Shown piece by piece: positions 169-61,077 of a stretch of 64,000 bases of DNA. The position numbers and the translations under genes are program-made. Location: positions 62,001-126,000 of the IMG/VR virus record IMGVR_UViG_3300050120_000152. One strand, written 5' to 3'. The notes below the pieces were generated by a model. That model worked only from the letters and a program-made list of their open reading frames with translations, searched no databases and was not told the DNA's origin. Position 1 is the stretch's first letter. Every line of letters starts with the position of its first letter.

Positions 169-1593
169 ATGAACAGTACATTTAAAACAGAATATTTGAA
201 CAACCTTACCGAGAATATGATTCTCGACGCAGATTCTTACAAGGCAAGCCATTTCGCTTTTCTTGAAGATGGTACTACAGACATTCGTCTATATATCGAG
301 GCCCGCACTGGTGCAAAGCATCAAGCTGTGGTAATGGCTGGTATCCAAGCCTTCAACAAAAAGTACATGATGAAGCCAATCACTCAATTTATGATTGATC
401 AGGCTGATTGGTTTCTTACCACTCATGGTGAGCCGTTTAATCGTGCTGGATGGGAATACGTGCTGAATTATCATGCTGGATATATGCCGGTCGTTATTAA
501 AAGCGCCGAAGAAGGCACCACTATCCCTATTGGTTGCCCGTACATCACCGTAGAGAACACTGACAAGCATCCTTTGGCTGCATGGTGCAGTTCGTACATT
601 GAAACGAAGATCATGCGTACATGGGCACCCATTGCTGTTGCAACACAGTCGAATCTTGTTCGCAAGCTTATCTTGGAATATCTTGAAAAGACTGGTACAC
701 CAGAATTGATTGATTATAAGATGGTTGATTTTGGTAGCCGTGGTGTTAGCTCTAAGGAAACTGCCGAAATTCTTGGTGCTGCTCATCTTACTAGTTTTCG
801 TTCTACAGATAATTTGATGGGCATTGCCCATGCAATGACATATTACAATGCTACTGAAATGTTGGGTGAATCTATCCCTGCCAGCGAGCATTCGGTGACC
901 TGTGCACGCGGCAAGGAAGGTGAACTTCAGTTCTATCTTGACATTGTTGATCGTTTCCTTGGTGAAGGTAAGATGGTATCGGTTGTTGGTGATACTTATG
1001 ACCTTGATGTTATGCTTGATATGCTAGGAACTATGGTTAAGCCATATTTGCTTGCAAAGGGTGGCACATGGGTAGTTCGTCCAGATAGTGGTGATCCTGT
1101 TCTTCAGGTCATGCAAACTATTCGCAAGTTGGAATTATATTTTGGTACAACTACCAATGATAAGGGCTATAAGGTTCTTCATCCTTCTGTTAGAATCATT
1201 CAAGGAGATGGTGTAGATGCTGCGTCGATCCATCGTATCTTGGTGGCTCTTGAGACGGCACATTATAGTGCGGACAATATCACATTTGGTTCGGGTGGTT
1301 GGTTGCTACAGTCGTTGAATCGTGACACCAATCGTACTGCCATGAAAGCATCGTATGTTGAAGTGGGTGATCGTAAGCTTGAAATCCGTAAGGAAGTCAA
1401 AACTGACCCAAGCAAGGCTTCGAAAGCTGGACGTGTTACTACTGTACTTCGCAACGGTAAGAAAATCTGTGTCAAGGAAGATGATATGATTGAAGGCGAT
1501 ATTGATCTTCTTAATGAAACCTATCGTGATGGTGAAGTCTTGAATTTGATTGACTTTGCGACAGTACGAGAGAACGTAAAAGCTGGGAAGTGA
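169..1593 (+). CDS. nadV: Nicotinamide phosphoribosyltransferase (NAMPT/NadV family)
   Basis: DSYKASH, DFGSRG, SIPASEHS, VVGDTYD, VVRPDSGDP, IIQGDGV and FGSGG motifs typical of NAMPT; GGAG RBS upstream. Confidence 0.93.
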   Translation: MNSTFKTEYLNNLTENMILDADSYKASHFAFLEDGTTDIRLYIEARTGAKHQAVVMAGIQAFNKKYMMKPITQFMIDQADWFLTTHGEPFNRAGWEYVLNYHAGYMPVVIKSAEEGTTIPIGCPYITVENTDKHPLAAWCSSYIETKIMRTWAPIAVATQSNLVRKLILEYLEKTGTPELIDYKMVDFGSRGVSSKETAEILGAAHLTSFRSTDNLMGIAHAMTYYNATEMLGESIPASEHSVTCARGKEGELQFYLDIVDRFLGEGKMVSVVGDTYDLDVMLDMLGTMVKPYLLAKGGTWVVRPDSGDPVLQVMQTIRKLELYFGTTTNDKGYKVLHPSVRIIQGDGVDAASIHRILVALETAHYSADNITFGSGGWLLQSLNRDTNRTAMKASYVEVGDRKLEIRKEVKTDPSKASKAGRVTTVLRNGKKICVKEDDMIEGDIDLLNETYRDGEVLNLIDFATVRENVKAGK

Positions 1594-15534: not shown

Positions 15535-16722
15535 ATGAAAATTTTTAAGGTAGGTGGAAGCATTCGTGATTTCTTTCTAAAAAAGACTCCACACGATCAT
15601 GATTATGTAGTCGTGGGTGCAACACCTTCTGAAATGGAATCTATGGGCTATAAACAAGTCGGTAAGGACTTCCCGGTCTACTTGCATCCTGATACTGGCG
15701 AAGAGTACGCGTTGGCTCGTACAGAGCGTAAAACAGGCTTGAAGCATACTGATTTTGATACAGTGTTTGATACTTCGGTAACCATTGAAACTGACCTTGC
15801 CAGACGTGATTTAACGATAAATTCTATTGCGCAAGATTTGGAAACTGGTGAATACATCGATCCATTCAATGGCATTCAAGATATTGAAAATAAAGTGCTG
15901 CGTCATACCACGGAAGCCTTCAAGGAAGACCCATTGCGTGTATTGCGTTTGGGACGTTTCTGTGCAAAATTTCCAGATTTTGAAGTGGCCGATGATACAG
16001 ATACAATGGTAAATCATATGATTGCCCGTGGTGAATTGGAGCATTTGTCCAAGGATCGTGTGTGGGAAGAAACTAAGAAAGCAGTGTTGTCAAAAGAACC
16101 GTTTAAATATTTTCTATTCTTACATCATGTGGAAGCATTACAATATGCTGTCATCGGTGGAAATATGATTACGGCTGAATTTGCTGAAGCGTTTAAGCGG
16201 ATTACCGAGTCTACTGAAAAAATGCCAGATGATGAAAAACTGTTGTGTCGTATGGCAGTCGTTTATTACCATTTGGGTACTTTATATAAATTGCAGTATC
16301 AATCTAACAAAGCTGCTACAGCAGAATTGAATACATGGAAAATTCCAACAGAAATTGCAGAATTTATTCAATTGGTGAATACTAAAGCATATGCGCTGAC
16401 GCATACTATTTTTAATTATAAGAATTTAGTTGAAATTATGGATGATATTGGAGTACGTAATAGAATTCAGAAGAATGACAGTTTCTTACAGAATTTGGGT
16501 TTAGTGTGTAACGCAATTTATCCAACAAAAGATATGTCTGCTACATATGACCCTGAATGGAATATTAAACATTTTATTGAACATGTACCATGCTATTTCG
16601 ATACCAAGGAAGCATTGGCCGAATGGATGGATGTAAATAAGCATGCTACAGGTAAAGAAATCAATGACAGATTGAAATTGATTAGAATACAAAATATGTT
16701 TTTAAATAGAGCTACACTATGA
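15535..16722 (+). CDS. cca: tRNA nucleotidyltransferase (CCA-adding enzyme, class II)
   Basis: VGGSIRD, DHDYVVVGA, VGKDFPV, EYALARTERK, DLARRDLTINSIA, EDPLRVLR. Confidence 0.95.
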   Translation: MKIFKVGGSIRDFFLKKTPHDHDYVVVGATPSEMESMGYKQVGKDFPVYLHPDTGEEYALARTERKTGLKHTDFDTVFDTSVTIETDLARRDLTINSIAQDLETGEYIDPFNGIQDIENKVLRHTTEAFKEDPLRVLRLGRFCAKFPDFEVADDTDTMVNHMIARGELEHLSKDRVWEETKKAVLSKEPFKYFLFLHHVEALQYAVIGGNMITAEFAEAFKRITESTEKMPDDEKLLCRMAVVYYHLGTLYKLQYQSNKAATAELNTWKIPTEIAEFIQLVNTKAYALTHTIFNYKNLVEIMDDIGVRNRIQKNDSFLQNLGLVCNAIYPTKDMSATYDPEWNIKHFIEHVPCYFDTKEALAEWMDVNKHATGKEINDRLKLIRIQNMFLNRATL

Positions 16723-27299: not shown

Positions 27300-27584
27300 A
27301 TGTTCGATTTGCCAGAAATTTTGCCGGAATTGTTACCGTGTCCATTCTGCGGTCATCATGCAATGTCACATGAAAAAGTTCATGGTGAATATTGGGGTCA
27401 ATGGGATTGGGAATTGCGTTGCTCATCATCACATTGTTGTGCTAGAATTCGTATTGTAGCTGATACATGGGAAGAGCCACGAACTGTGTTGCAGCCTGAT
27501 GGAAGTTATTTACCAACAAAGATTACACGTTTAACAAATCTTTATAAAATGTGGAATCGAAGAGTGGTTGACAAGTCTAATTAA
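27300..27584 (+). CDS. Lar-like Zn-ribbon protein
   Basis: LLPCPFCG...C...C...WNRR. Confidence 0.6.
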   Translation: MFDLPEILPELLPCPFCGHHAMSHEKVHGEYWGQWDWELRCSSSHCCARIRIVADTWEEPRTVLQPDGSYLPTKITRLTNLYKMWNRRVVDKSN

Positions 27585-27599
27585 TGTGTTATAGTAGTT

Positions 27600-27715
27600 T
27601 TGTGATATGGGTCAAAGTTGAAAGGGATCGTTTAGGTAATCCCTGAAGCCTACTCAGTAAGGGTTAATAACCAAGGTTTCCTAGCCGCTTTGGTGATACA
27701 ACTGAGATATCACAA
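27600..27715 (+). ncRNA. Unassigned structured RNA (multi-way junction with kissing loops)
   Basis: Starts just after TTGACA...TGnTATAGT; terminal helix ttgtgatat/atatcacaa; internal helices agggat/atccct and accaagg/ctttggt with complementary loops. Confidence 0.6.
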
Positions 27716-27743: not shown

Positions 27744-27751
27744 TATAAATA
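27744..27751 (+). promoter_or_regulatory. T4-type late promoter TATAAATA (also 3708-3715 minus, 30733, 35494, 40367-40374 minus, 40715, 49576, 55304, 57683)
   Basis: Exact TATAAATA in intergenic DNA just upstream of genes or RNAs. Confidence 0.75.
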
Positions 27752-27757
27752 GAAATA

Positions 27758-28150
27758 TCCAAAGTAATTTGGATTATGATTGTAAAGATATCGTAAGGTA
27801 TCTGAGATTGTGAGTAATAAAGGGCCGCGACACGAGGGTTCGACTCCCTCCATCTCCACCACATATGTTCTTTACTGTTGCAACAGTAACGCTAGACGCC
27901 TATCAACTCCCTTCGAAAGGAGCCATGTGTAGGATGAGACAAGCCCAATGATGGCGCGGAAGAACATAGCTGATGGGGATGCAATGGCTTCGACCGGGGT
28001 TAGAATAGACAAACAGACAATCCGTTTAGAATGGTACGTTATACCTTAAAAAACTATAAATGCTTCTAACGATGCGATTTATTCAATGGAATACAGCTTA
28101 GCTGCTTGAAATTGATGGGGTTTAATCCACCTTATTACCCAACAAGATTA
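27758..28150 (+). ncRNA. ssrA: Circularly permuted (two-piece) tmRNA; outer ends approximate
   Basis: Acceptor piece ends GAGGGTTCGACTCCCTC-CATCTCC-ACCA (27861); coding piece starts GGGGATG (27975) giving G3:U70; tag ORF 28062-28109 encodes ASNDAIYSMEYSLAA*. Confidence 0.92.
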
Positions 28151-28151
28151 C

Positions 28152-28175
28152 AAAAAGGAGCTTCGGCTCCTTTTT
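28152..28175 (+). terminator. Intrinsic terminator of the tmRNA
   Basis: aaaaaggagc-ttcg-gctccttttt. Confidence 0.9.
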
Positions 28176-28255
28176 GTTTTATAGTGCATTGCAAAATATT
28201 CAAATGATTTTCATCCACCATAAATACTTAGACATTTATTTTGGAGGATACTAAA

Positions 28256-28438
28256 ATGTTAACTTTAATCTTTGGAGTTGTATTAGGCGTTGTGTTATGT
28301 GGATTAGGAATTGTAACCTTACCAAAATTGAAGACTTTATTGGCTGCAATTAAAGCAAAGTTTGCAAAGGCACCAGTAGTCGCTGCTACTGTTACCACTC
28401 CACCAACATTAACACCAGCAACTACCCCCGTACCGTAA
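28256..28438 (+). CDS. Small membrane protein
   Basis: GGAGG RBS, N-terminal TM, Pro/Thr tail; CATAAATA upstream. Confidence 0.6.
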   Translation: MLTLIFGVVLGVVLCGLGIVTLPKLKTLLAAIKAKFAKAPVVAATVTTPPTLTPATTPVP

Positions 28439-28517: not shown

Positions 28518-29279
28518 ATGAATTATAGTAAAAATGCGGCAATGGAACTAGCAACACAGATTCTCAAATCACAAAATCCCACACAAATGGGTGGCGGCTT
28601 GGATGAACTTTTTCAATTAGATTTGGGACAACCGGATAGAAAAATCAAACATTTCAAACAAACAATTCCGGTCAATATCCATCATTTTTATATTGTTGAA
28701 GATATCAAAGAAGTTGATTATTATTTAAGCATGATCAACACAATTAGAACAGCAGAACAACATGATACCATATTCATTTACTTGAATACTCCCGGTGGAA
28801 ATCTACATACTGCCATACAAATTATTGCAGCTATTAGACAATCATCCGCAACTGTTGTAACATGTCTTGAGGGCGTTGTATGCTCGGCTGGTACAATGAT
28901 TTTCTTAGCTGGTCACAAGCATGTAGTTAATCAAAATTGTACATTCATGATCCACAACTATTCTCAATGGGTAGGTGGTAAGGGTAATGACATTACGATT
29001 CAGGTAAAATATACAGAATCTTATTTTAGAAAATTATCAGAAGATATTTATGGTAAATTCTTATCTAAGGATGAAATTGAATCAGTATTGGAGGGTAAAG
29101 ATTTATGGATGGAAAGTTCTGATGTTGCAAGACGTGTTAAAGATAAATTAATAGCACAAGAAGCACCCGAAGATTCAGTTCCAGCCGTACATCAGCCTGC
29201 ACCATCTGTAGATGCAACAGAACCTGTTGTACCTATTAAACCAAAACGTAAACGAGTAGCCTCAAAGAAAAAAGTGTGA
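28518..29279 (+). CDS. ClpP-like serine protease (S14)
   Basis: YLNTPGG, VCSAGTMIFLAG (catalytic Ser), FMIHN, KDLWM. Confidence 0.85.
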   Translation: MNYSKNAAMELATQILKSQNPTQMGGGLDELFQLDLGQPDRKIKHFKQTIPVNIHHFYIVEDIKEVDYYLSMINTIRTAEQHDTIFIYLNTPGGNLHTAIQIIAAIRQSSATVVTCLEGVVCSAGTMIFLAGHKHVVNQNCTFMIHNYSQWVGGKGNDITIQVKYTESYFRKLSEDIYGKFLSKDEIESVLEGKDLWMESSDVARRVKDKLIAQEAPEDSVPAVHQPAPSVDATEPVVPIKPKRKRVASKKKV

Positions 29280-36366: not shown

Positions 36367-36822
36367 TTATTTATTGTATTCGTAGATTGTAATCTCGATC
36401 CGTGGATACTTGGCATGATATTCTTTAAAAATAGGTTCTACATCTAATTCCCATGATAGTCCACCTAATCCACATCCTATTTTAGGAAAATGTGCAGATA
36501 AATTATCATGTAAAGAACACCAATTTAGCGCTTGGTGTATTACCTGTTCGATAGCTTTTACTGAAGCATATCGTTTTCCATCATTACCATAATTTAATTG
36601 AGTGAATCCATTACCAATGTAAAGATCATTTTCGATATGTACTATTTGTAATTTCCCGAGAGAATCTACCCCTGTAGGCATCATTTTAAACTTATCATAA
36701 ACTTGAGGGAATTGTTTACGAATTTGACCTGCTACCCCGCTGCCAAAAGCACCACTGGCATTTGTTCCATGAACGATTAATCCTTCAGTGCATTTAAGAA
36801 TGTCTTTATTGAGTAATTTCAT
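36367..36822 (-). CDS. Macro domain (ADP-ribose processing) protein
   Basis: IVHGTN..GAFGSGVA, FPKIGCGLGGLSW. Confidence 0.9.
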   Translation of the reverse strand: MKLLNKDILKCTEGLIVHGTNASGAFGSGVAGQIRKQFPQVYDKFKMMPTGVDSLGKLQIVHIENDLYIGNGFTQLNYGNDGKRYASVKAIEQVIHQALNWCSLHDNLSAHFPKIGCGLGGLSWELDVEPIFKEYHAKYPRIEITIYEYNK

Positions 36823-38242
36823 TGATGATCTTTTCCTGTATTAAGCGTTGACCAACTTCATTAAATAGAGTATCTGATTGTGCAATCTTACGTAATCCTG
36901 CTAATTTTTGGGTATAAATTATATCAAGTTTTACGTAATGAAGTCTCTCCCGAATTTTTTTAATAGTACGAATATTAGCTAGGATAAATGGATGCAATGC
37001 TTCTTCTGTGCGAGTCAACAACTCACACATCACCCCAAACATTTTGGTATAATAATCTTCAGCCAAAATAATATCGTAACTGGTTATCAATCCAACACGG
37101 TTAATAACTTCGCGTTGCTTATCTGGATCAGCATAATATCCAATATTATGTCGATTATCAGAAACCACATTGATAAATTCCATATCACTCAACTCATCAG
37201 ATGGAATAGTTTTAGCTCTCCACCGCTTTAGCCCAGAAATGATACTATATTCTATTTTATTGGTACCCCCGCTCTTTTGAGAAATGATCGGGTCAAAGTA
37301 TATTTGATATTTACGATAATCTTCGGTGTCCATGATATGGCGGCGAATAGTAGAATGTGACAAAAAGGTTTTAATCAATTTTTCCTTGGGAAAATGTTGA
37401 ACAAAATAGGTTTGATAACTCTTGTCATTTAAGATCAAAGCTTCAGTGGCAAAATAGAAATTTTCGCTTTCGAATGCCTCTTTAGAAGCAGCATCATTCT
37501 TTTCTAAAAATAATGCCTTTAATTTTTCAGCAGGTGCCCCATCAGCCAATTGTGTAACCAATTGATGTACACTTACACTGGCTGGTAAAATATAACTCAA
37601 ATCACCACCCACAAGATATTCATCAAGTACATAACTTAACCGGCGTGGAGAAATTTCATCTTTCACATCATCTTCTAAAGCATCCCACCAATCACATGCG
37701 GTATTACCAATCGCTCCATAACGCTTTGTAAAGAACTCTCGGTTAACGGCATAGGGTAGCTCCACATGAACATGGAAACGGTCACGTTGAGCCGGATCAA
37801 GCTTCTCAACATCATAGGAATCATCATCGTCAGGGTTGATTGCTGCCCAAATAACTTCAAGGTTCTCCATCTTCTTACCATTGATGGATTTGAACTGTAG
37901 AATTTCCATTACCGCGTTTCGCACTTTAGGCGCTGCGCGATTATATTCATCAATCATGATAGCTCTAACACTATCAGTTTGAAATAGTTTAGGGCGCACC
38001 AAATCAAGATAACTTTCGTGTGTGATAGGGTCAAATACTTCTTTAGGCACACCTACGAAGTCTACCCATGGATCAAGTGTGGAAGCACTGAAGTAGAGCC
38101 AATTGCCCTTACCATAGTGTTCATCAAATTTCTCTTTAACGGTTTCGGTCTTACCGATGCCGTGTTTACCTGTAAATAACACATTACGTTTGTTTACGAT
38201 CCATGAATCGTAATTTGCTGGTAGAGGGGTACGCTTGGTCAC
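36806..38242 (-). CDS. MoxR-like AAA+ ATPase
   Basis: GKHGIGKT, DFVGVP, IDEYNRA, AINP, LDPAQRDRF, SPR. Confidence 0.88.
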   Translation of the reverse strand: MTKRTPLPANYDSWIVNKRNVLFTGKHGIGKTETVKEKFDEHYGKGNWLYFSASTLDPWVDFVGVPKEVFDPITHESYLDLVRPKLFQTDSVRAIMIDEYNRAAPKVRNAVMEILQFKSINGKKMENLEVIWAAINPDDDDSYDVEKLDPAQRDRFHVHVELPYAVNREFFTKRYGAIGNTACDWWDALEDDVKDEISPRRLSYVLDEYLVGGDLSYILPASVSVHQLVTQLADGAPAEKLKALFLEKNDAASKEAFESENFYFATEALILNDKSYQTYFVQHFPKEKLIKTFLSHSTIRRHIMDTEDYRKYQIYFDPIISQKSGGTNKIEYSIISGLKRWRAKTIPSDELSDMEFINVVSDNRHNIGYYADPDKQREVINRVGLITSYDIILAEDYYTKMFGVMCELLTRTEEALHPFILANIRTIKKIRERLHYVKLDIIYTQKLAGLRKIAQSDTLFNEVGQRLIQEKIINEITQ

Positions 38243-38330: not shown

Positions 38331-39653
38331 ATGACACTTCAAACTACCGACGAAGCAACAAATAACATACCTGCCCCAGCAGTTAAACATCGTTACAATA
38401 CCGTAGCTCGCATGTCTCAAGTAGAAATGATGGAAATTTCGTTCCATTTACAGAAGCATCACGCCATTTTTAACAAATTTTTTACATCTGGTGCACCCAT
38501 CTTTGAGCGTACCTTACATACTGCTGCTGTCTATGCTACTGCTGATACTGGTAAATTCTTGTTCATGAAGATTAACCCTGATTTTTGGGCTTCTCTAGAC
38601 ATGACACAAAAGCTATTCATCATTTCACACGAATGTCTGCATCTGATTCTAAACCATTTAACCCGCTTGTGCAATGAAAAATTTCCACGATTGGTTAATT
38701 ACGCTAAAGATTTGGTCGTCAATCATATGGCAGTAGAAAAATTTGGATTCAAGCGTTCAGAAATCGATCCCGAAAATGTGTATTGCTGGGTAGATAAATT
38801 TTTTAAATCAGAAGAAAACATTAAAACGAATGAAACGGCTGAATATTATTATTCATTGCTGTTGGTAAAGAAAGAGAATGGTACACTTCCCGAAGGTTGT
38901 GAAACCGTGGATGAACATGCAACCATCTCCCCAGAAGATTTAAATGATTTTATTGATGATATGGATAAATTTTTAACGCCTGAAGAAAAGGAATATCTTA
39001 AGGATATTCTTATTCAACATGGTGCAGTAGGCGGTGGTACTATCGCAGGTAAAGGTGGTGGCCCCGGTTCATGGACATTCTTTGATATTAAAGTAAAAAA
39101 GAAAAAGAAGTGGGAAACCGTTATTAAACGTTGGGCTATGCAAACTGCGGGTCGAAAAGAAAAAGTTGCTGACCAATGGGCTAGAATTAATCGTCGGTTT
39201 GCTTTTCTTAGTGATGATTTATTTTTACCATCAGAATTAGAAACTGATGAAGCACACAAAGAAAAGAAAAAGATTGACGTAATGTTTTTCTTGGATACAA
39301 GTGGATCATGTCATCATTTAGCAGAACGATTTTTTATTGCCGCGAAATCTCTCCCATCAGAGAGATTTAATATACGATTGTTCTGCTTTCATGATTATGT
39401 AGTGGAAACAGATATTTCTGGTGACAAAGTGCATAAAGGTGGTGGAACTAATTTTCAAATTATTGAAAATGAAATTCAAAAAACAGTAAGTGCGGGGGGC
39501 AAATATCCAAAAGCAGTATTTGTGGTGACAGATGGTGATGGTACTCCCATATCAGCAGAGTATCCAGAAAATTACCATTGGTTTTTGAGTCATCGTTCTA
39601 TATCATATATTCCAAAAGAATCTAAATGGTACGATTTGAATGATTTTGAATAA
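38331..39653 (+). CDS. HExxH metallopeptidase + VWA domain protein (DUF2201-like), partner of the AAA+ ATPase
   Basis: HECLHLILNH, NYAKD..VN, LDTSGS (MIDAS), GGGTNF, VTDG. Confidence 0.85.
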   Translation: MTLQTTDEATNNIPAPAVKHRYNTVARMSQVEMMEISFHLQKHHAIFNKFFTSGAPIFERTLHTAAVYATADTGKFLFMKINPDFWASLDMTQKLFIISHECLHLILNHLTRLCNEKFPRLVNYAKDLVVNHMAVEKFGFKRSEIDPENVYCWVDKFFKSEENIKTNETAEYYYSLLLVKKENGTLPEGCETVDEHATISPEDLNDFIDDMDKFLTPEEKEYLKDILIQHGAVGGGTIAGKGGGPGSWTFFDIKVKKKKKWETVIKRWAMQTAGRKEKVADQWARINRRFAFLSDDLFLPSELETDEAHKEKKKIDVMFFLDTSGSCHHLAERFFIAAKSLPSERFNIRLFCFHDYVVETDISGDKVHKGGGTNFQIIENEIQKTVSAGGKYPKAVFVVTDGDGTPISAEYPENYHWFLSHRSISYIPKESKWYDLNDFE

Positions 39654-57831: not shown

Positions 57832-57981
57832 GGGACGTTAGCTCAATTGGTTAGAGCGATGACCTCTCCGGGAGAGTTTTAAGACTCTCCAATCTAACAG
57901 ATTTTTATAGTCTGTTACTTTGGGTAGTTTTCCCTAAAGATAAGTCATGGGTTGCTGGTTCAAGTCCAGCACGTCCCACCA
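57832..57981 (+). tRNA. tRNA gene interrupted by a 73-nt structured insert in the anticodon loop (Ile-GAT, CAT or Lys-CTT depending on the junction)
   Basis: Perfect acceptor, D and T arms; anticodon stem ATGAC/GTCAT encloses 80 nt. Confidence 0.85.
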
Positions 57982-60090: not shown

Positions 60091-61077
60091 ATGGAAAAGT
60101 TTACATCAATTGAATCCCTCAAGCATATTGTCGCCAATGTGCGCAAGCATTACAACAAGATCGCTAAACCGTTCCCTACCCTCAATTTTACGGGTACGGT
60201 GAAGCTTCATGGCACAAACGCATCAGTAATGCGCAAACATTCTGGCAAACTTCAACCACAATCGCGTGAACGCATTCTTGATGTTACATCTGACAATTAT
60301 GGCTTTGCCATGTTTATTGAATCCAACAAGGAAGCCGTTAATAATCTCTTCAGTGCCTTCCCCAATGATATTGATGTTACGCTCTATGGTGAGTGGTGTG
60401 GTGGTAATATCCAGCCTGCTGTAGCTCTTACACAGGTTCCAAAGCATTGGGTATTATTTGCTGTTAAGTATGGTGTCGGTGAAGATGCCAAATATATGAA
60501 ATTATCAAATGTTGTGCATAATAATGCATATGGTATTTACAATATTGCACAGATTCCATCGTACCATGTAGAAATTAATTTTCTTTCGCCTGAACCAGCA
60601 TCAGAAATTCTTGCTGATTTGACTCTTAAGGTTGAGCAAGAATGTCCATGGGCTACACTCATGTTCAATGTTTCCGGGATTGGTGAAGGTCTTTGCTGGG
60701 TCTGCGATGAACATCCTGAAATTAGTGATCTATGGTTTAAGACCAAGGGCATGCTTCACAAGGGCAATGATAAAACCAAAGTACCGAAAATTAAGATTGA
60801 TGACCAGAAACTTGCTTCTATTATGGAAGTAGTGAAGGAAGTCTTGCCACAATGGCGTCTTGAACAGGGTATTTCGCATCTTCGTGATGAAGGTATCCCA
60901 TTGCTTCCACAGGGTACGAGTGATTATTTGAAATGGATTGCCAAAGATATTCTCAAGGAAGAAGTTGACACTATTGCAGCCAGTGGTTTTGACTGGAAGG
61001 GTATCAATGGTTCTGTCATGCAAACTGCACGTCAGTATTTCTTGACAGCTATTCAGCAGAATTTTGAGGAAGTATAA
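60091..61077 (+). CDS. RNA ligase (Rnl2-like)
   Basis: KLHGTNA, QSR, DNYGFA, LYGEWCG, GEGLCW, FKTKG. Confidence 0.85.
   Translation: MEKFTSIESLKHIVANVRKHYNKIAKPFPTLNFTGTVKLHGTNASVMRKHSGKLQPQSRERILDVTSDNYGFAMFIESNKEAVNNLFSAFPNDIDVTLYGEWCGGNIQPAVALTQVPKHWVLFAVKYGVGEDAKYMKLSNVVHNNAYGIYNIAQIPSYHVEINFLSPEPASEILADLTLKVEQECPWATLMFNVSGIGEGLCWVCDEHPEISDLWFKTKGMLHKGNDKTKVPKIKIDDQKLASIMEVVKEVLPQWRLEQGISHLRDEGIPLLPQGTSDYLKWIAKDILKEEVDTIAASGFDWKGINGSVMQTARQYFLTAIQQNFEEV

What the first reader, a model, noticed from the sequence alone, without database searches (positions are those of the whole stretch)
27744..28175. Circularly permuted two-piece tmRNA in a phage
Seen: the tRNA-like 3' end (T-arm + CATCTCCACCA, ending 27861) lies upstream of the 5' end (GGGGATG...TTCGAC, 27975). 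The two form a 7-bp acceptor stem with G3:U70. The tag reading frame after ATAAAT is ASNDAIYSMEYSLAA-stop, gattgt/acaatc can pair the two pieces, and a late promoter and terminator bound the unit. Known: permuted tmRNAs occur in Alphaproteobacteria and some cyanobacteria and Betaproteobacteria; the phage tmRNAs I know are mostly one-piece. This could be an independent permutation or a clue to the host.
Basis: partly seen in the sequence, partly recalled or inferred. Interest (0 to 1): 0.8.

Follow-up and report, generated by a model that had tools for sequence, protein, structure and literature searches.

The report
Two-piece tmRNA gene in jumbo phage
A 340-kb phage from peat carries a genuine circularly permuted (two-piece) tmRNA gene for rescuing stalled ribosomes; such genes are already known and common in phages, but here and in many other phages it sits just upstream of a phage ClpP protease gene, which had not been pointed out in the papers I could search.

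Summary
ARAGORN calls a permuted tmRNA at 27769-28200 with the tag ASNDAIYSMEYSLAA. Rfam tmRNA_permuted scores 88.9 bits against a threshold of 47. Covariation across 44 distinct relatives supports the acceptor stem (G3:U70 invariant), the T-arm, the helices joining the two pieces and the pseudoknot after the tag.

It is not an independent permutation. It aligns end to end with the betaproteobacterial model (RF01850, 72.9 bits, E 7e-22) and shares its layout with Dechloromonas/Azonexus tmRNAs.

It is not a new kind either. Two-piece phage tmRNAs were reported in 2022 (PMC9004378). One strict pattern finds at least 287 IMG/VR viral contigs that carry one, with spacers of 5-128 nt. The 113-nt spacer here is long but not unusual.

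The host clue is weak. The "late promoter" is unproven; a stronger sigma-70 promoter lies 150 nt upstream. Processing and tagging could not be tested because no RNA run holds this phage.

The most interesting result is new. In 34 of 291 phage loci a ClpP gene lies within 3 kb downstream on the same strand, and in none upstream. The window belongs to a deeply diverged group in which the two genes are directly adjacent.

The parts
27568..27595 (+). Sigma-70-type promoter TTGACA-16 nt-TATAGT with an extended -10 TG. It is the best promoter candidate for the unit and would start transcription near 27602.
   Evidence: 11 of 12 hexamer matches with TG present. It is a consensus match only; function is not shown.
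27600..27715 (+). Leader between the promoter and the tmRNA, closed by a 9-bp stem (UUGUGAUAU 27600-27608 with AUAUCACAA 27707-27715). Its role is unknown.
   Evidence: MFE -33.4 kcal/mol but z-score only -1.4. No Rfam match at E<10. No homologue in any fetched locus.
27744..27751 (+). It is a possible -10 element or late promoter; this is unproven.
   Evidence: 11 occurrences against 13.1 expected; several copies lie just upstream of tRNA genes and ORFs. In relative L006 the same motif is the -10 of a TTGACA-16-TATAAA promoter.
27756..27861 (+). Acceptor piece (the 3' part of a standard tmRNA). It comprises a 5' tail at 27756-27805 (5' end not determined), inter-piece helix strands at 27806-27830, the T-arm at 27834-27850, the acceptor 3' strand at 27851-27857, discriminator A27858 and an encoded CCA at 27859-27861.
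   Evidence: ARAGORN; Rfam alignments; covariation across 44 distinct sequences.
27862..27974 (+). Intervening segment of 113 nt, predicted to be excised. A 10-bp stem (AUGUUCUUUA... / ...AAGAACAU) extends the acceptor stem, and the segment ends in CUGAU before G1. It contains an 18-nt palindrome at 27872-27889.
   Evidence: fold at -27.5 kcal/mol, and the same closing-stem design appears in nearly all phage relatives although the sequence is not conserved; no homologue elsewhere.
27975..28181 (+). Coding piece. It comprises the acceptor 5' strand GGGGAUG at 27975-27981, inter-piece helix strands at 27994-28022, the PK1 region at 28023-28055 and the tag ORF at 28062-28109. After the tag come an H-type pseudoknot (S1 28117-28121 with 28129-28133; S2 28123-28127 with 28146-28150) and a terminal hairpin that also acts as the terminator (28150-28177 plus U-tract).
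   Evidence: pseudoknot S2 covaries across phages and Dechloromonas; terminator.
28062..28109 (+). Tag reading frame: resume codon GCU, peptide ASNDAIYSMEYSLAA, stop UGA.
   Evidence: read directly from the sequence.
28257..28438 (+). Small ORF of 60 aa with a hydrophobic N-terminus and a GGAGG Shine-Dalgarno sequence, lying between the tmRNA and clpP. Function unknown.
   Evidence: No Pfam hit.
28518..29279 (+). ClpP-family serine protease (253 aa), the conserved downstream neighbour of the tmRNA gene.
   Evidence: Pfam CLP_protease 63.4 bits against a cut-off of 20.2; phrog_1827 'ATP-dependent protease', E 2e-58. Ser, His and Asp align with solved ClpPs; conserved linkage to the tmRNA gene.

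Best explanation
This is a functional ssrA gene of the circularly permuted, two-piece type. Its architecture is that of the betaproteobacterial lineage, and it has been carried and inherited within a clade of jumbo phages.

Inferred mechanism, by analogy with Caulobacter and other two-piece tmRNAs: one precursor is transcribed, probably from the sigma-70 promoter at 27568-27595 and/or the TATAAATA element, and ends at the 28150-28181 hairpin. RNase P cuts 5' of G27975, and 3' trimming stops at the encoded CCA at 27861, which removes the 113-nt structured spacer. The acceptor piece (about 56-106 nt) and the coding piece (about 207 nt) stay together through the acceptor stem and the helices 27806-27830 / 27994-28022.

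The host AlaRS would then charge the RNA, using G3:U70. The host SmpB and EF-Tu would deliver it to stalled ribosomes, and translation would resume at GCU 28062, adding ASNDAIYSMEYSLAA to the stalled protein. The C-terminal LAA would mark tagged proteins for ClpXP-type degradation, plausibly by the phage's own ClpP encoded just downstream.

Shown here: the gene's identity, its structure and covariation, its conservation, and its linkage to clpP. Inferred only: processing, charging, tagging, and the coupling to ClpP.
For: Detection: ARAGORN calls a permuted tmRNA with an intact tag. Rfam RF04321 scores 88.9 bits against a gathering score of 47. There is a full-length alignment to RF01850 beta_tmRNA at 72.9 bits, E 7e-22.

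Covariation in 44 distinct sequences: G3:U70 is invariant in 44/44. Acceptor pair 5:68 occurs as U-A 20, C-G 15 and G-C 7. T-stem pairs show 2-4 pair types. Pairs of the inter-piece helix 27824-27830:27994-28000 are 38-44 of 44 canonical, with 1-7 canonical pair types per pair.

The outer helix covaries as GAUUGU/ACAAUC, GACUGU/ACAGUU, UGCUG/CAGCA, UGUCG/CGACA and GAUAG/CUAUC. The post-tag pseudoknot GGGG...CCUUNUUACC has a covarying S2 shared with Dechloromonas.

Vertical inheritance: the order ligase-NUDIX-tmRNA is shared with L006, and tmRNA-ClpP-primase with L002 and L003-5, at 35-59% protein identity.

The same sequence is present in three peat samples. ClpP has an intact catalytic triad and is linked to the tmRNA gene across phages.
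Against: There are no RNA data for this phage, so transcription, cleavage at 27861/27975 and tagging are unobserved. The subtype score is below Rfam's beta_tmRNA threshold (72.9 < 84). Two pairs in the inter-piece helices are non-canonical in the window and in L006: A27830.C27994, plus two mismatches in the middle helix. No SmpB gene was found among 67 window ORFs scanned, so function depends on a host SmpB that has not been identified. The remaining roughly 276 kb of the genome were not examined. A terminator and a separate promoter-like site lie between the tmRNA and clpP, so the two are not one transcript.
Confidence: 0.85

Rival explanations
1. The RNA is a decoy rather than a working tmRNA. 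It soaks up host SmpB, AlaRS or EF-Tu and so blocks host trans-translation, as proposed for the tRNA-like-domain-only RNA of mycobacteriophage DS6A.
For: Phage DS6A carries a TLD-only tmRNA-like RNA, and a similar molecule inhibits tmRNA (PMC4131195; PMC11915505). No SmpB gene is in the window.
Against: The tag ORF is intact, with a GCU resume codon, the conserved AUAAAU context and a canonical ...LAA end. Tags are conserved as ORFs across 267 phage loci although their sequences differ. A pure decoy would need neither the pseudoknot nor the ORF.
Confidence: 0.06
2. The permutation arose independently in this phage lineage and was not inherited from the known beta-type lineage.
For: The score lies below the beta_tmRNA gathering threshold. 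The spacer is 113 nt against about 25 nt in Dechloromonas, the CCA is fully encoded, and the tag is longer.
Against: The alignment to RF01850 covers model positions 1-331. The break point is the same, and so are the single post-tag pseudoknot with the GGGG/CCUUNUUACC motif and the terminal UUCG hairpin. All 14 phage relatives tested type as beta, 8 of them above threshold, including L003 of the same clade at 110 bits.
Confidence: 0.04
3. The feature is an artefact: bacterial DNA mis-binned or chimerically assembled into a viral contig, or two ssrA fragments left side by side by island integration.
For: tmRNA genes are common integration sites that leave displaced fragments (PMC4131195). Logan contigs of run X1 break inside the spacer at 27872-27901.
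Against: The GC content is 33-38% across the whole window, with no local jump. The contig break coincides with an 18-nt perfect palindrome. Two other samples give contigs that span the junctions with no differences. Flanking genes are phage-like, and their nearest Atlas clusters are 89-100% viral. The same gene order recurs in other large viral contigs. The two halves pair with each other and covary.
Confidence: 0.01
4. The gene is a decaying relic with no present function.
For: A few non-canonical pairs occur in the inter-piece helices, and the subtype score is below threshold.
Against: All the identity elements are intact: G3:U70, the T-loop, the CCA, the resume codon and the stop. The same mismatches are shared with L006, whose ligase is only 59% identical, which implies long retention under selection. 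The sequence is identical in three samples.
Confidence: 0.03

Closest known systems
Betaproteobacterial two-piece tmRNA (Rfam RF01850 beta_tmRNA), for example Dechloromonas/Azonexus ssrA (loci L010-L018)
   Same: The gene order is the same: acceptor piece, then spacer, then coding piece. The same helices join the pieces. The resume context AUAAAUGC is the same, as are the single post-tag H-type pseudoknot with GGGG/CCUUNUUACC and the terminal hairpin with a UUCG loop.
   Different: The spacer is 113 nt against about 25 nt. The CCA is fully encoded, whereas Dechloromonas has CC followed by T. The tag has 15 residues (ASNDAIYSMEYSLAA) against 10 (ANDEHFAIAA). The gene is about 42-45% GC and sits in a 35% GC phage genome. 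The 5' tail carries two hairpins of its own. The score is below the family threshold.
Two-piece tmRNAs of cultured phages (OM43 phage Melnitz, pelagimyophages, cyanophages; PMC9004378)
   Same: These are phage-borne, circularly permuted ssrA genes with intact tags, found in lytic myophage-type genomes without integrases. They are thought to sustain or redirect ribosome rescue during infection.
   Different: Melnitz's gene is alpha-type and carries a glutamine riboswitch, and those phages are marine with genomes far below 340 kb. This one is beta-type, from peat, in a jumbo phage, has no recognisable riboswitch and is paired with clpP. There is no nucleotide match to any of 50,697 GenBank phage records.
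tmRNAs of huge phages (Al-Shayeb et al. 2020, PMC7162821) and of mycobacteriophage Bxz1 / Bacillus phage G
   Same: tmRNA is part of a set of translation-related genes in large phages. Here that set includes tRNAs, a CCA-adding-enzyme-like protein, YqeY and an RNA ligase.
   Different: Bxz1-type and phage G tmRNAs are one-piece. The huge-phage paper does not discuss gene form or linkage to ClpP.
Caulobacter crescentus two-piece tmRNA (alpha-type; Keiler, Shapiro & Williams 2000, cited and my own knowledge)
   Same: It is the experimentally established model for how a permuted precursor is cut into two base-paired RNAs that still tag proteins. Its tag is also long (14 aa) and ends in a hydrophobic residue followed by AA.
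   Different: It belongs to a different permuted lineage (RF01849) with different pseudoknot content. I made no direct comparison because I had no Caulobacter sequence from a tool.

Membership tests
Permuted (two-piece) tmRNA, Rfam RF04321 | Score at or above the curated gathering threshold of the covariance model | tested here: met
   88.9 bits against 47, model positions 1-213 of 213, E 9.9e-16.
Permuted (two-piece) tmRNA, Rfam RF04321 | Gene order permuted: T-arm, acceptor 3' strand and CCA lie upstream of the 5' acceptor strand and tag ORF | tested here: met
   The CCA ends at 27861 and G1 is at 27975. ARAGORN flags the gene as tmRNA*.
Permuted (two-piece) tmRNA, Rfam RF04321 | tRNA-Ala-like domain: 7-bp acceptor stem with G3:U70, T-arm with a GUUCGAnUC loop, discriminator A and CCA | tested here: met
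   G27977:U27855 is invariant in 44 of 44 relatives. T-stem and acceptor pairs covary.
Permuted (two-piece) tmRNA, Rfam RF04321 | Helices that hold the two pieces together (P2 equivalent), supported by compensatory changes | tested here: met
   For example, 27829:27995 occurs as U-A 33, C-G 8, G-C 2 and A-U 1, so 44 of 44 are canonical. The outer helix covaries. Two positions are mismatched in the window itself.
Permuted (two-piece) tmRNA, Rfam RF04321 | Tag ORF with an Ala resume codon, a hydrophobic ...AA end and a stop codon | tested here: met
   GCU 28062 to UGA 28109, reading ASNDAIYSMEYSLAA.
Permuted (two-piece) tmRNA, Rfam RF04321 | Precursor processed into two separate RNAs | not testable with these tools
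   No RNA run holds this phage. The one RNA-seq contig recovered comes from a relative and still joins the spacer to the coding piece.
Permuted (two-piece) tmRNA, Rfam RF04321 | Alanylation, SmpB binding and trans-translation activity | not testable with these tools
   These need biochemistry. No SmpB Pfam hit was found among 67 window ORFs, and the rest of the genome was not examined.
Beta-type two-piece tmRNA, Rfam RF01850 | Score at or above the gathering threshold (84 bits) | tested here: not met
   72.9 bits (E 7e-22), but it is the best-scoring clan member and is aligned over model positions 1-331. Clade relative L003 scores 110.2 bits, and 8 of 14 phage relatives pass.
Beta-type two-piece tmRNA, Rfam RF01850 | Single post-tag pseudoknot (GGGG / CCUUNUUACC with a covarying second stem) followed by a terminal hairpin | tested here: met
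   S1 is 28117-28121 with 28129-28133, S2 is 28123-28127 with 28146-28150, and the hairpin is 28150-28177. S2 covaries across phages and Dechloromonas.
Beta-type two-piece tmRNA, Rfam RF01850 | PK1 between the inter-piece helix and the resume codon | tested here: inconclusive
   The Rfam hairpin 28023-28038 has a mismatch. An alternative hairpin GGUA...UACC (28033-28045) covaries with L006 (GGUU...AACC). I did not resolve a full pseudoknot.
ClpP (Pfam PF00574, peptidase S14), for the neighbouring gene | Family score above the cut-off, and a Ser-His-Asp triad | tested here: met
   63.4 bits against 20.2. Ser in GVVCSAG, His in MIHN and Asp in KDLWM align with the catalytic residues of solved ClpPs. 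Partnership with ClpX was not tested.

The most novel reading that the evidence does not exclude
Many large phages carry ssrA and clpP as a linked pair, so the phage brings both the degradation tag and the protease that destroys tagged proteins. This would let it keep clearing stalled ribosomes and recycling amino acids after host shut-off, or redirect which proteins are destroyed.

Evidence so far: in 291 phage loci with a permuted tmRNA, all 41 ClpP-like genes found are co-oriented with it. Of these, 34 lie within 3 kb downstream and none within 3 kb upstream, with equal flank available on both sides. In the window's group the two genes are directly adjacent across eight ClpP clusters at 70% identity, even where the other neighbours differ. 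In a second group Cpn10 and a cell-wall hydrolase lie between them.

I found no paper describing this linkage.
Probability: 0.35. Interest if true: 0.55.

Novelty: new member of a known kind. Interest (0 to 1): 0.35.

Why it matters
As a tmRNA the finding is ordinary. It adds one more beta-type two-piece ssrA to a class that is already documented in phages and is abundant in viral metagenomes.

Its value lies in three by-products. First, it shows that permuted, beta-type tmRNAs are widespread and old in large phages. This may explain the odd "beta-type" hits in MAGs of unrelated bacterial and archaeal phyla in the tmRNA database, and it warns against using the tmRNA type to predict hosts. Second, phage versions typically have long, stem-closed spacers (mostly 60-120 nt, against about 25 nt in Dechloromonas). 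Third, the recurrent ssrA-to-clpP arrangement suggests that phages bring a matched tag-and-protease pair. That idea can be tested directly with standard phage-host and in vitro degradation assays.

Tried and rejected
- **GenBank phages:** nucleotide searches of 50,697 records, both distant (tmRNA region) and near (20 kb), gave no match. There is no cultured close relative.
- **RNA evidence:** the index search for RNA runs returned only two wastewater runs holding 5% of the words. Laying them down showed a relative's unprocessed or DNA-derived contig, so processing stays untested.
- **Leader 27600-27715 as a riboswitch or known RNA:** no Rfam hit at E<10, a fold z-score of only -1.4 and no homologue in any locus. 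I left it as unexplained.
- **Spacer as a conserved RNA or a small gene:** the spacers share no sequence. The mean longest ORF in 80 spacers is 7.6 codons against 6.2 in shuffles. The window's 28-codon ORF (27864-27950) has no Shine-Dalgarno sequence and is not hydrophobic, so it is probably chance.
- **TATAAATA as an enriched late-promoter motif:** it is not enriched.
- **Host from the tmRNA type:** the genome scan hit only Dechloromonas/Azonexus, but the pattern was built from the beta consensus and is therefore biased, and the database table shows beta-type genes scattered over many phyla. Atlas neighbours of ClpP and the ligase are viral and give no host. Shine-Dalgarno use (25 of 58 genes against 10% background) only weakly argues against hosts that rarely use Shine-Dalgarno sequences.
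- **Tag endings and ClpP linkage:** LAA ends 15 of 17 unique tags with a downstream ClpP and 55 of 81 without, which is not a convincing difference.
- **SmpB in the window:** not found.
- **Sharkady & Williams 2004:** this paper could not be read.
Full report
**1. What is there**

- T-stem: G27834-G27838 pairs with C27846-C27850 around the loop UUCGACU.
- Acceptor 3' end: the strand CAUCUCC (27851-27857), discriminator A27858 and CCA (27859-27861) follow the T-arm.
- Acceptor stem: 113 nt further on, GGGGAUG (27975-27981) can pair with that strand to give a 7-bp acceptor stem with G27977:U27855 as G3:U70.
- Tag frame: it starts at GCU 28062 after AUAAAU, reads ASNDAIYSMEYSLAA and stops at UGA 28107-28109.

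ARAGORN calls a permuted tmRNA (tmRNA*) at 27769-28200 with exactly this tag. Rfam's tmRNA_permuted model (RF04321) matches 27806-28109 over its full length at 88.9 bits (threshold 47, E 1e-15 for the whole window).

**2. What genome this is**

The ClpP gene next door retrieves its own contig, IMGVR_UViG_3300050120_000152, which is 340,344 bp long. The same DNA is in a peat metagenome run at about 155x depth, and identical pieces are in two further peat samples.

The window is uniformly 33-38% GC. ARAGORN finds five tRNA genes in it. Its protein genes include an NAD-dependent ligase, a primase, NAMPT, NAD synthase, a CCA-adding-enzyme-like protein, an RNA ligase, PhoH, YqeY and Acb1. The nearest protein-atlas clusters of the ligase and of ClpP are 89-100% viral. 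It is a jumbo phage. It has no nucleotide relative among 50,697 GenBank phage records.

**3. Which kind of permuted tmRNA**

In a permissive Rfam scan the best subtype is beta_tmRNA (RF01850). It scores 72.9 bits, E 7e-22, and is aligned from model position 1 to 331 (27756-28174). That is below the curated 84-bit threshold.

A motif scan of 185,579 species genomes, using three motifs shared by the window and the beta consensus, hit only ten genomes. They are Dechloromonas or Azonexus genomes, or MAGs labelled only as beta- or Proteobacteria. Their genes are permuted and carry the tag ANDEHFAIAA.

Side by side, the layout is the same:
- 5' tail, inter-piece helix strand, T-arm and acceptor end;
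- then the spacer;
- then GGGG..UUCGAC, the helix strands, the PK1 region and AUAAAUGC-tag;
- then an H-type pseudoknot built on GGGG / CCUUNUUACC;
- then a terminal hairpin with a UUCG loop.

The second stem of that pseudoknot differs in sequence but stays paired in the window, in L003, L022, L023, L038, L039 and L051, and in Dechloromonas.

This is therefore the known beta-type design, not an independent permutation. The window differs from the bacterial genes in four ways:
- the spacer is 113 nt rather than about 25 nt;
- the CCA is fully encoded;
- the tag is longer;
- the base composition is AT-rich.

**4. Comparative support for the structure**

I removed the spacers from 44 distinct sequences (38 from phages, 6 bacterial) and aligned them.
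- G3:U70 is invariant in 44 of 44.
- Acceptor pair 5:68 occurs as U-A (20), C-G (15) and G-C (7). Pair 4:69 switches once to U-A.
- T-stem pairs show two to four canonical types.
- The inner inter-piece helix (27824-27830 with 27994-28000) is canonical in 38-44 of 44 sequences. Six of its seven pairs show three or more canonical pair types, and the seventh is G-C throughout. For example, 27829:27995 is U-A 33, C-G 8, G-C 2 and A-U 1.
- The outer helix covaries as GAUUGU/ACAAUC (window), GACUGU/ACAGUU (L006), UGCUG/CAGCA, UGUCG/CGACA and GAUAG/CUAUC.

The window and its closest relative L006 share an A.C mismatch at 27830:27994 and a weak middle helix.

**5. Is it new? No**

PMC9004378 described the two-piece tmRNA of OM43 phage Melnitz. 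It reported that 53 of 133 unique tmRNAs in 18,146 phage genomes were two-piece by ARAGORN. PMC7162821 noted tmRNAs and SmpB in huge phages.

My own scans of IMG/VR used one strict pattern, CTCCACCA-spacer-GGGGNTGNNNTGGNTTCGAC. The number of contigs by spacer length was:

| Spacer length | Contigs |
|---|---|
| 5-35 nt | 59 |
| 36-66 nt | 60 |
| 98-128 nt | 48 |

. ARAGORN confirms a tmRNA at 267 of the 291 loci. The 113-nt spacer sits in the upper part of the phage distribution, which lies mostly at 60-120 nt, and is not exceptional.

The spacers share no sequence. Nearly all form a 10-13-bp stem that prolongs the acceptor stem, and they end in (U)UGAU before G1. This fits a tRNA-precursor-like substrate.

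**6. Host clue**

The clue is weak. The tmRNA database's own table lists "Permuted (beta)" genes in:
- 594 Pseudomonadota genomes;
- Bacteroidota (23), Bacillota (7), Acidobacteriota (5), Patescibacteria (5) and Actinomycetota (4);
- several archaeal phyla.

That scatter is what phage-borne copies binned into MAGs would produce. This is my inference.

Within the window's clade the gene is old:
- L006 shares ligase-NUDIX-tmRNA, with the ligase 59% identical.
- L002 and L003-5 share tmRNA-ClpP-primase, with ClpP 52-55% and the primase 35% identical.

A betaproteobacterial host is possible but not shown.

**7. Transcription signals**

The hairpin at 28150-28177 plus its U-tract is a good intrinsic terminator. 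It is also the conserved terminal hairpin of the coding piece.

TATAAATA at 27744 is present, but the motif is not enriched (11 occurrences against 13.1 expected). Several copies do lie just upstream of tRNA genes and ORFs, and in L006 the same motif is the -10 of a TTGACA-16-TATAAA promoter.

A much better sigma-70 promoter lies at 27568-27595: TTGACA-16-TATAGT with an extended -10 TG, 11 of 12 matches. It would give a leader of about 140 nt closed by a 9-bp stem (27600-27608 / 27707-27715). That leader has no Rfam match, no relative and an unremarkable folding z-score.

**8. The ClpP neighbour**

ORF 28518-29279 is a ClpP-family protease.
- Pfam CLP_protease scores 63.4 bits, and phrog_1827 "ATP-dependent protease" gives E 2e-58.
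- Ser, His and Asp align with the catalytic residues of solved ClpPs.
- By features its nearest atlas clusters are stand-alone viral ClpPs. Clusters named head-maturation protease appear only further down the list of structural neighbours of the top hit.

I built an HMM from the relatives and searched all ORFs of 291 phage loci that hold a permuted tmRNA. This found 41 ClpP-like genes, every one on the tmRNA's strand. Of these, 34 lie within 3 kb downstream and none within 3 kb upstream, with 677 kb against 662 kb of flank available. They form 13 clusters at 70% identity and 7 at 50%.

In the window's group the genes are directly adjacent. This group is the window, L002, L003-5, L067/73/75, L068, L095, L247 and L300, which make eight clusters at 70% identity. 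Adjacency survives where the other neighbours change: a primase follows ClpP in some loci and tRNA genes follow it in others. In a second group ClpP lies 1.0-2.6 kb downstream, with Cpn10 and a cell-wall hydrolase in between.

Caveats:
- Related phages are not independent samples.
- The tmRNA and clpP are separated by a terminator and a promoter-like site.
- Tags ending in LAA are not significantly commoner when ClpP is linked (15 of 17 against 55 of 81).
- I found no paper that reports the linkage, but the library is not complete.

**9. How it most likely works**

Shown:
- an intact, conserved, structurally supported two-piece ssrA gene;
- its long residence in a jumbo-phage clade;
- its linkage to clpP.

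Inferred from the established biology of two-piece tmRNAs (Caulobacter model; my own knowledge):
- One precursor is made.
- RNase P cuts at 27974/27975, and 3' trimming stops at the encoded CCA.
- The two RNAs stay paired.
- Host AlaRS, SmpB and EF-Tu act on them.
- Stalled proteins receive ASNDAIYSMEYSLAA and are degraded by a ClpXP-type protease, possibly one containing the phage ClpP.

From my own knowledge of the E. coli tag, residues N3, D4 and Y7 and the terminal LAA sit where the SspB and ClpX determinants lie. This is a resemblance, not a test. No SmpB gene was seen among 67 window ORFs, and the rest of the genome was not examined.

**10. Verdict**

The feature is real and correctly identified, but it is a new member of a known and common kind. 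The independent-permutation idea is rejected, the host clue is weak and the late promoter is unproven. The ssrA-clpP linkage is the part worth following up.

Noticed in passing
window 57832-57978 (+): Rfam finds a tRNA (54.7 bits) with a 77-nt insertion in the anticodon loop; ARAGORN does not call it. If the insert lies after U33, the loop reads CU-GAU-AA, which would be tRNA-Ile(GAU). The insert is three small hairpins and is far too short for a group I intron. An RNA ligase gene lies nearby at 60091-61077.
   Followed up: partly
window 27568-27715 (+): A near-consensus sigma-70 promoter is followed by a leader of about 115 nt closed by a 9-bp stem, directly upstream of the tmRNA. It has no Rfam match and no relative in any fetched locus, and its purpose is unknown.
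   Followed up: partly
L036, L060, L251/L270 and L296 (spacers of their permuted tmRNA genes): Some phage tmRNA spacers contain ATG-initiated ORFs of 22-32 codons for hydrophobic, membrane-helix-like peptides, two of them (L060, L296) behind a Shine-Dalgarno-like AAAGG(A) motif. L251 and L270 differ by conservative substitutions, which suggests real coding. Across all spacers ORF length is not enriched (7.6 against 6.2 codons). The window's own 28-codon ORF (27864-27950) looks like chance.
   Followed up: partly
L118 8310-10296; L241 6188-8155: In a second group of phages the permuted tmRNA is followed by a SleB-type cell-wall hydrolase and then ClpP, all on one strand; in L118 a Cpn10/GroES-like gene also lies directly after the tmRNA.
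   Followed up: partly
window 49576, 55304, 57648 and 57683 (+): Copies of TATAAATA lie just upstream of tRNA genes. Two of them are combined with a TTGACA about 17-20 nt upstream, so the motif may serve as a -10 element for the phage's stable-RNA genes.
   Followed up: partly
window 27872-27889: An 18-nt perfect palindrome (ACTGTTGCAACAGT core) lies inside the spacer. Short-read contigs of the source run break exactly here.
   Followed up: yes
window 169-1593, 15535-16722 and other ORFs: The window holds auxiliary genes typical of huge phages: NAMPT plus NAD synthase (NAD salvage), a CCA-adding-enzyme-like protein, YqeY, a PP-loop ATPase, PhoH, Acb1 (anti-CBASS), two deaminase-like proteins, 2OG-Fe(II) oxygenases, and a MoxR-like AAA protein (36806-38242) next to a DUF2201 metallopeptidase-like protein (38331-39653).
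   Followed up: no
run X13 (wastewater RNA-seq), laid on window 27966-28051: A 170-nt contig from an RNA library matches the coding piece with 5 differences. It is preceded by a spacer sequence like that of L006, so a relative's tmRNA precursor (or contaminating DNA) is present in wastewater.
   Followed up: no
PMC11915505, Supplementary Table 2: The tmRNA database lists beta-type permuted tmRNAs in MAGs of Bacteroidota, Bacillota, Acidobacteriota, Patescibacteria, Nanoarchaeota, Asgardarchaeota and others. Given how common beta-type genes are on viral contigs, these may be phage contigs binned into MAGs.
   Followed up: no
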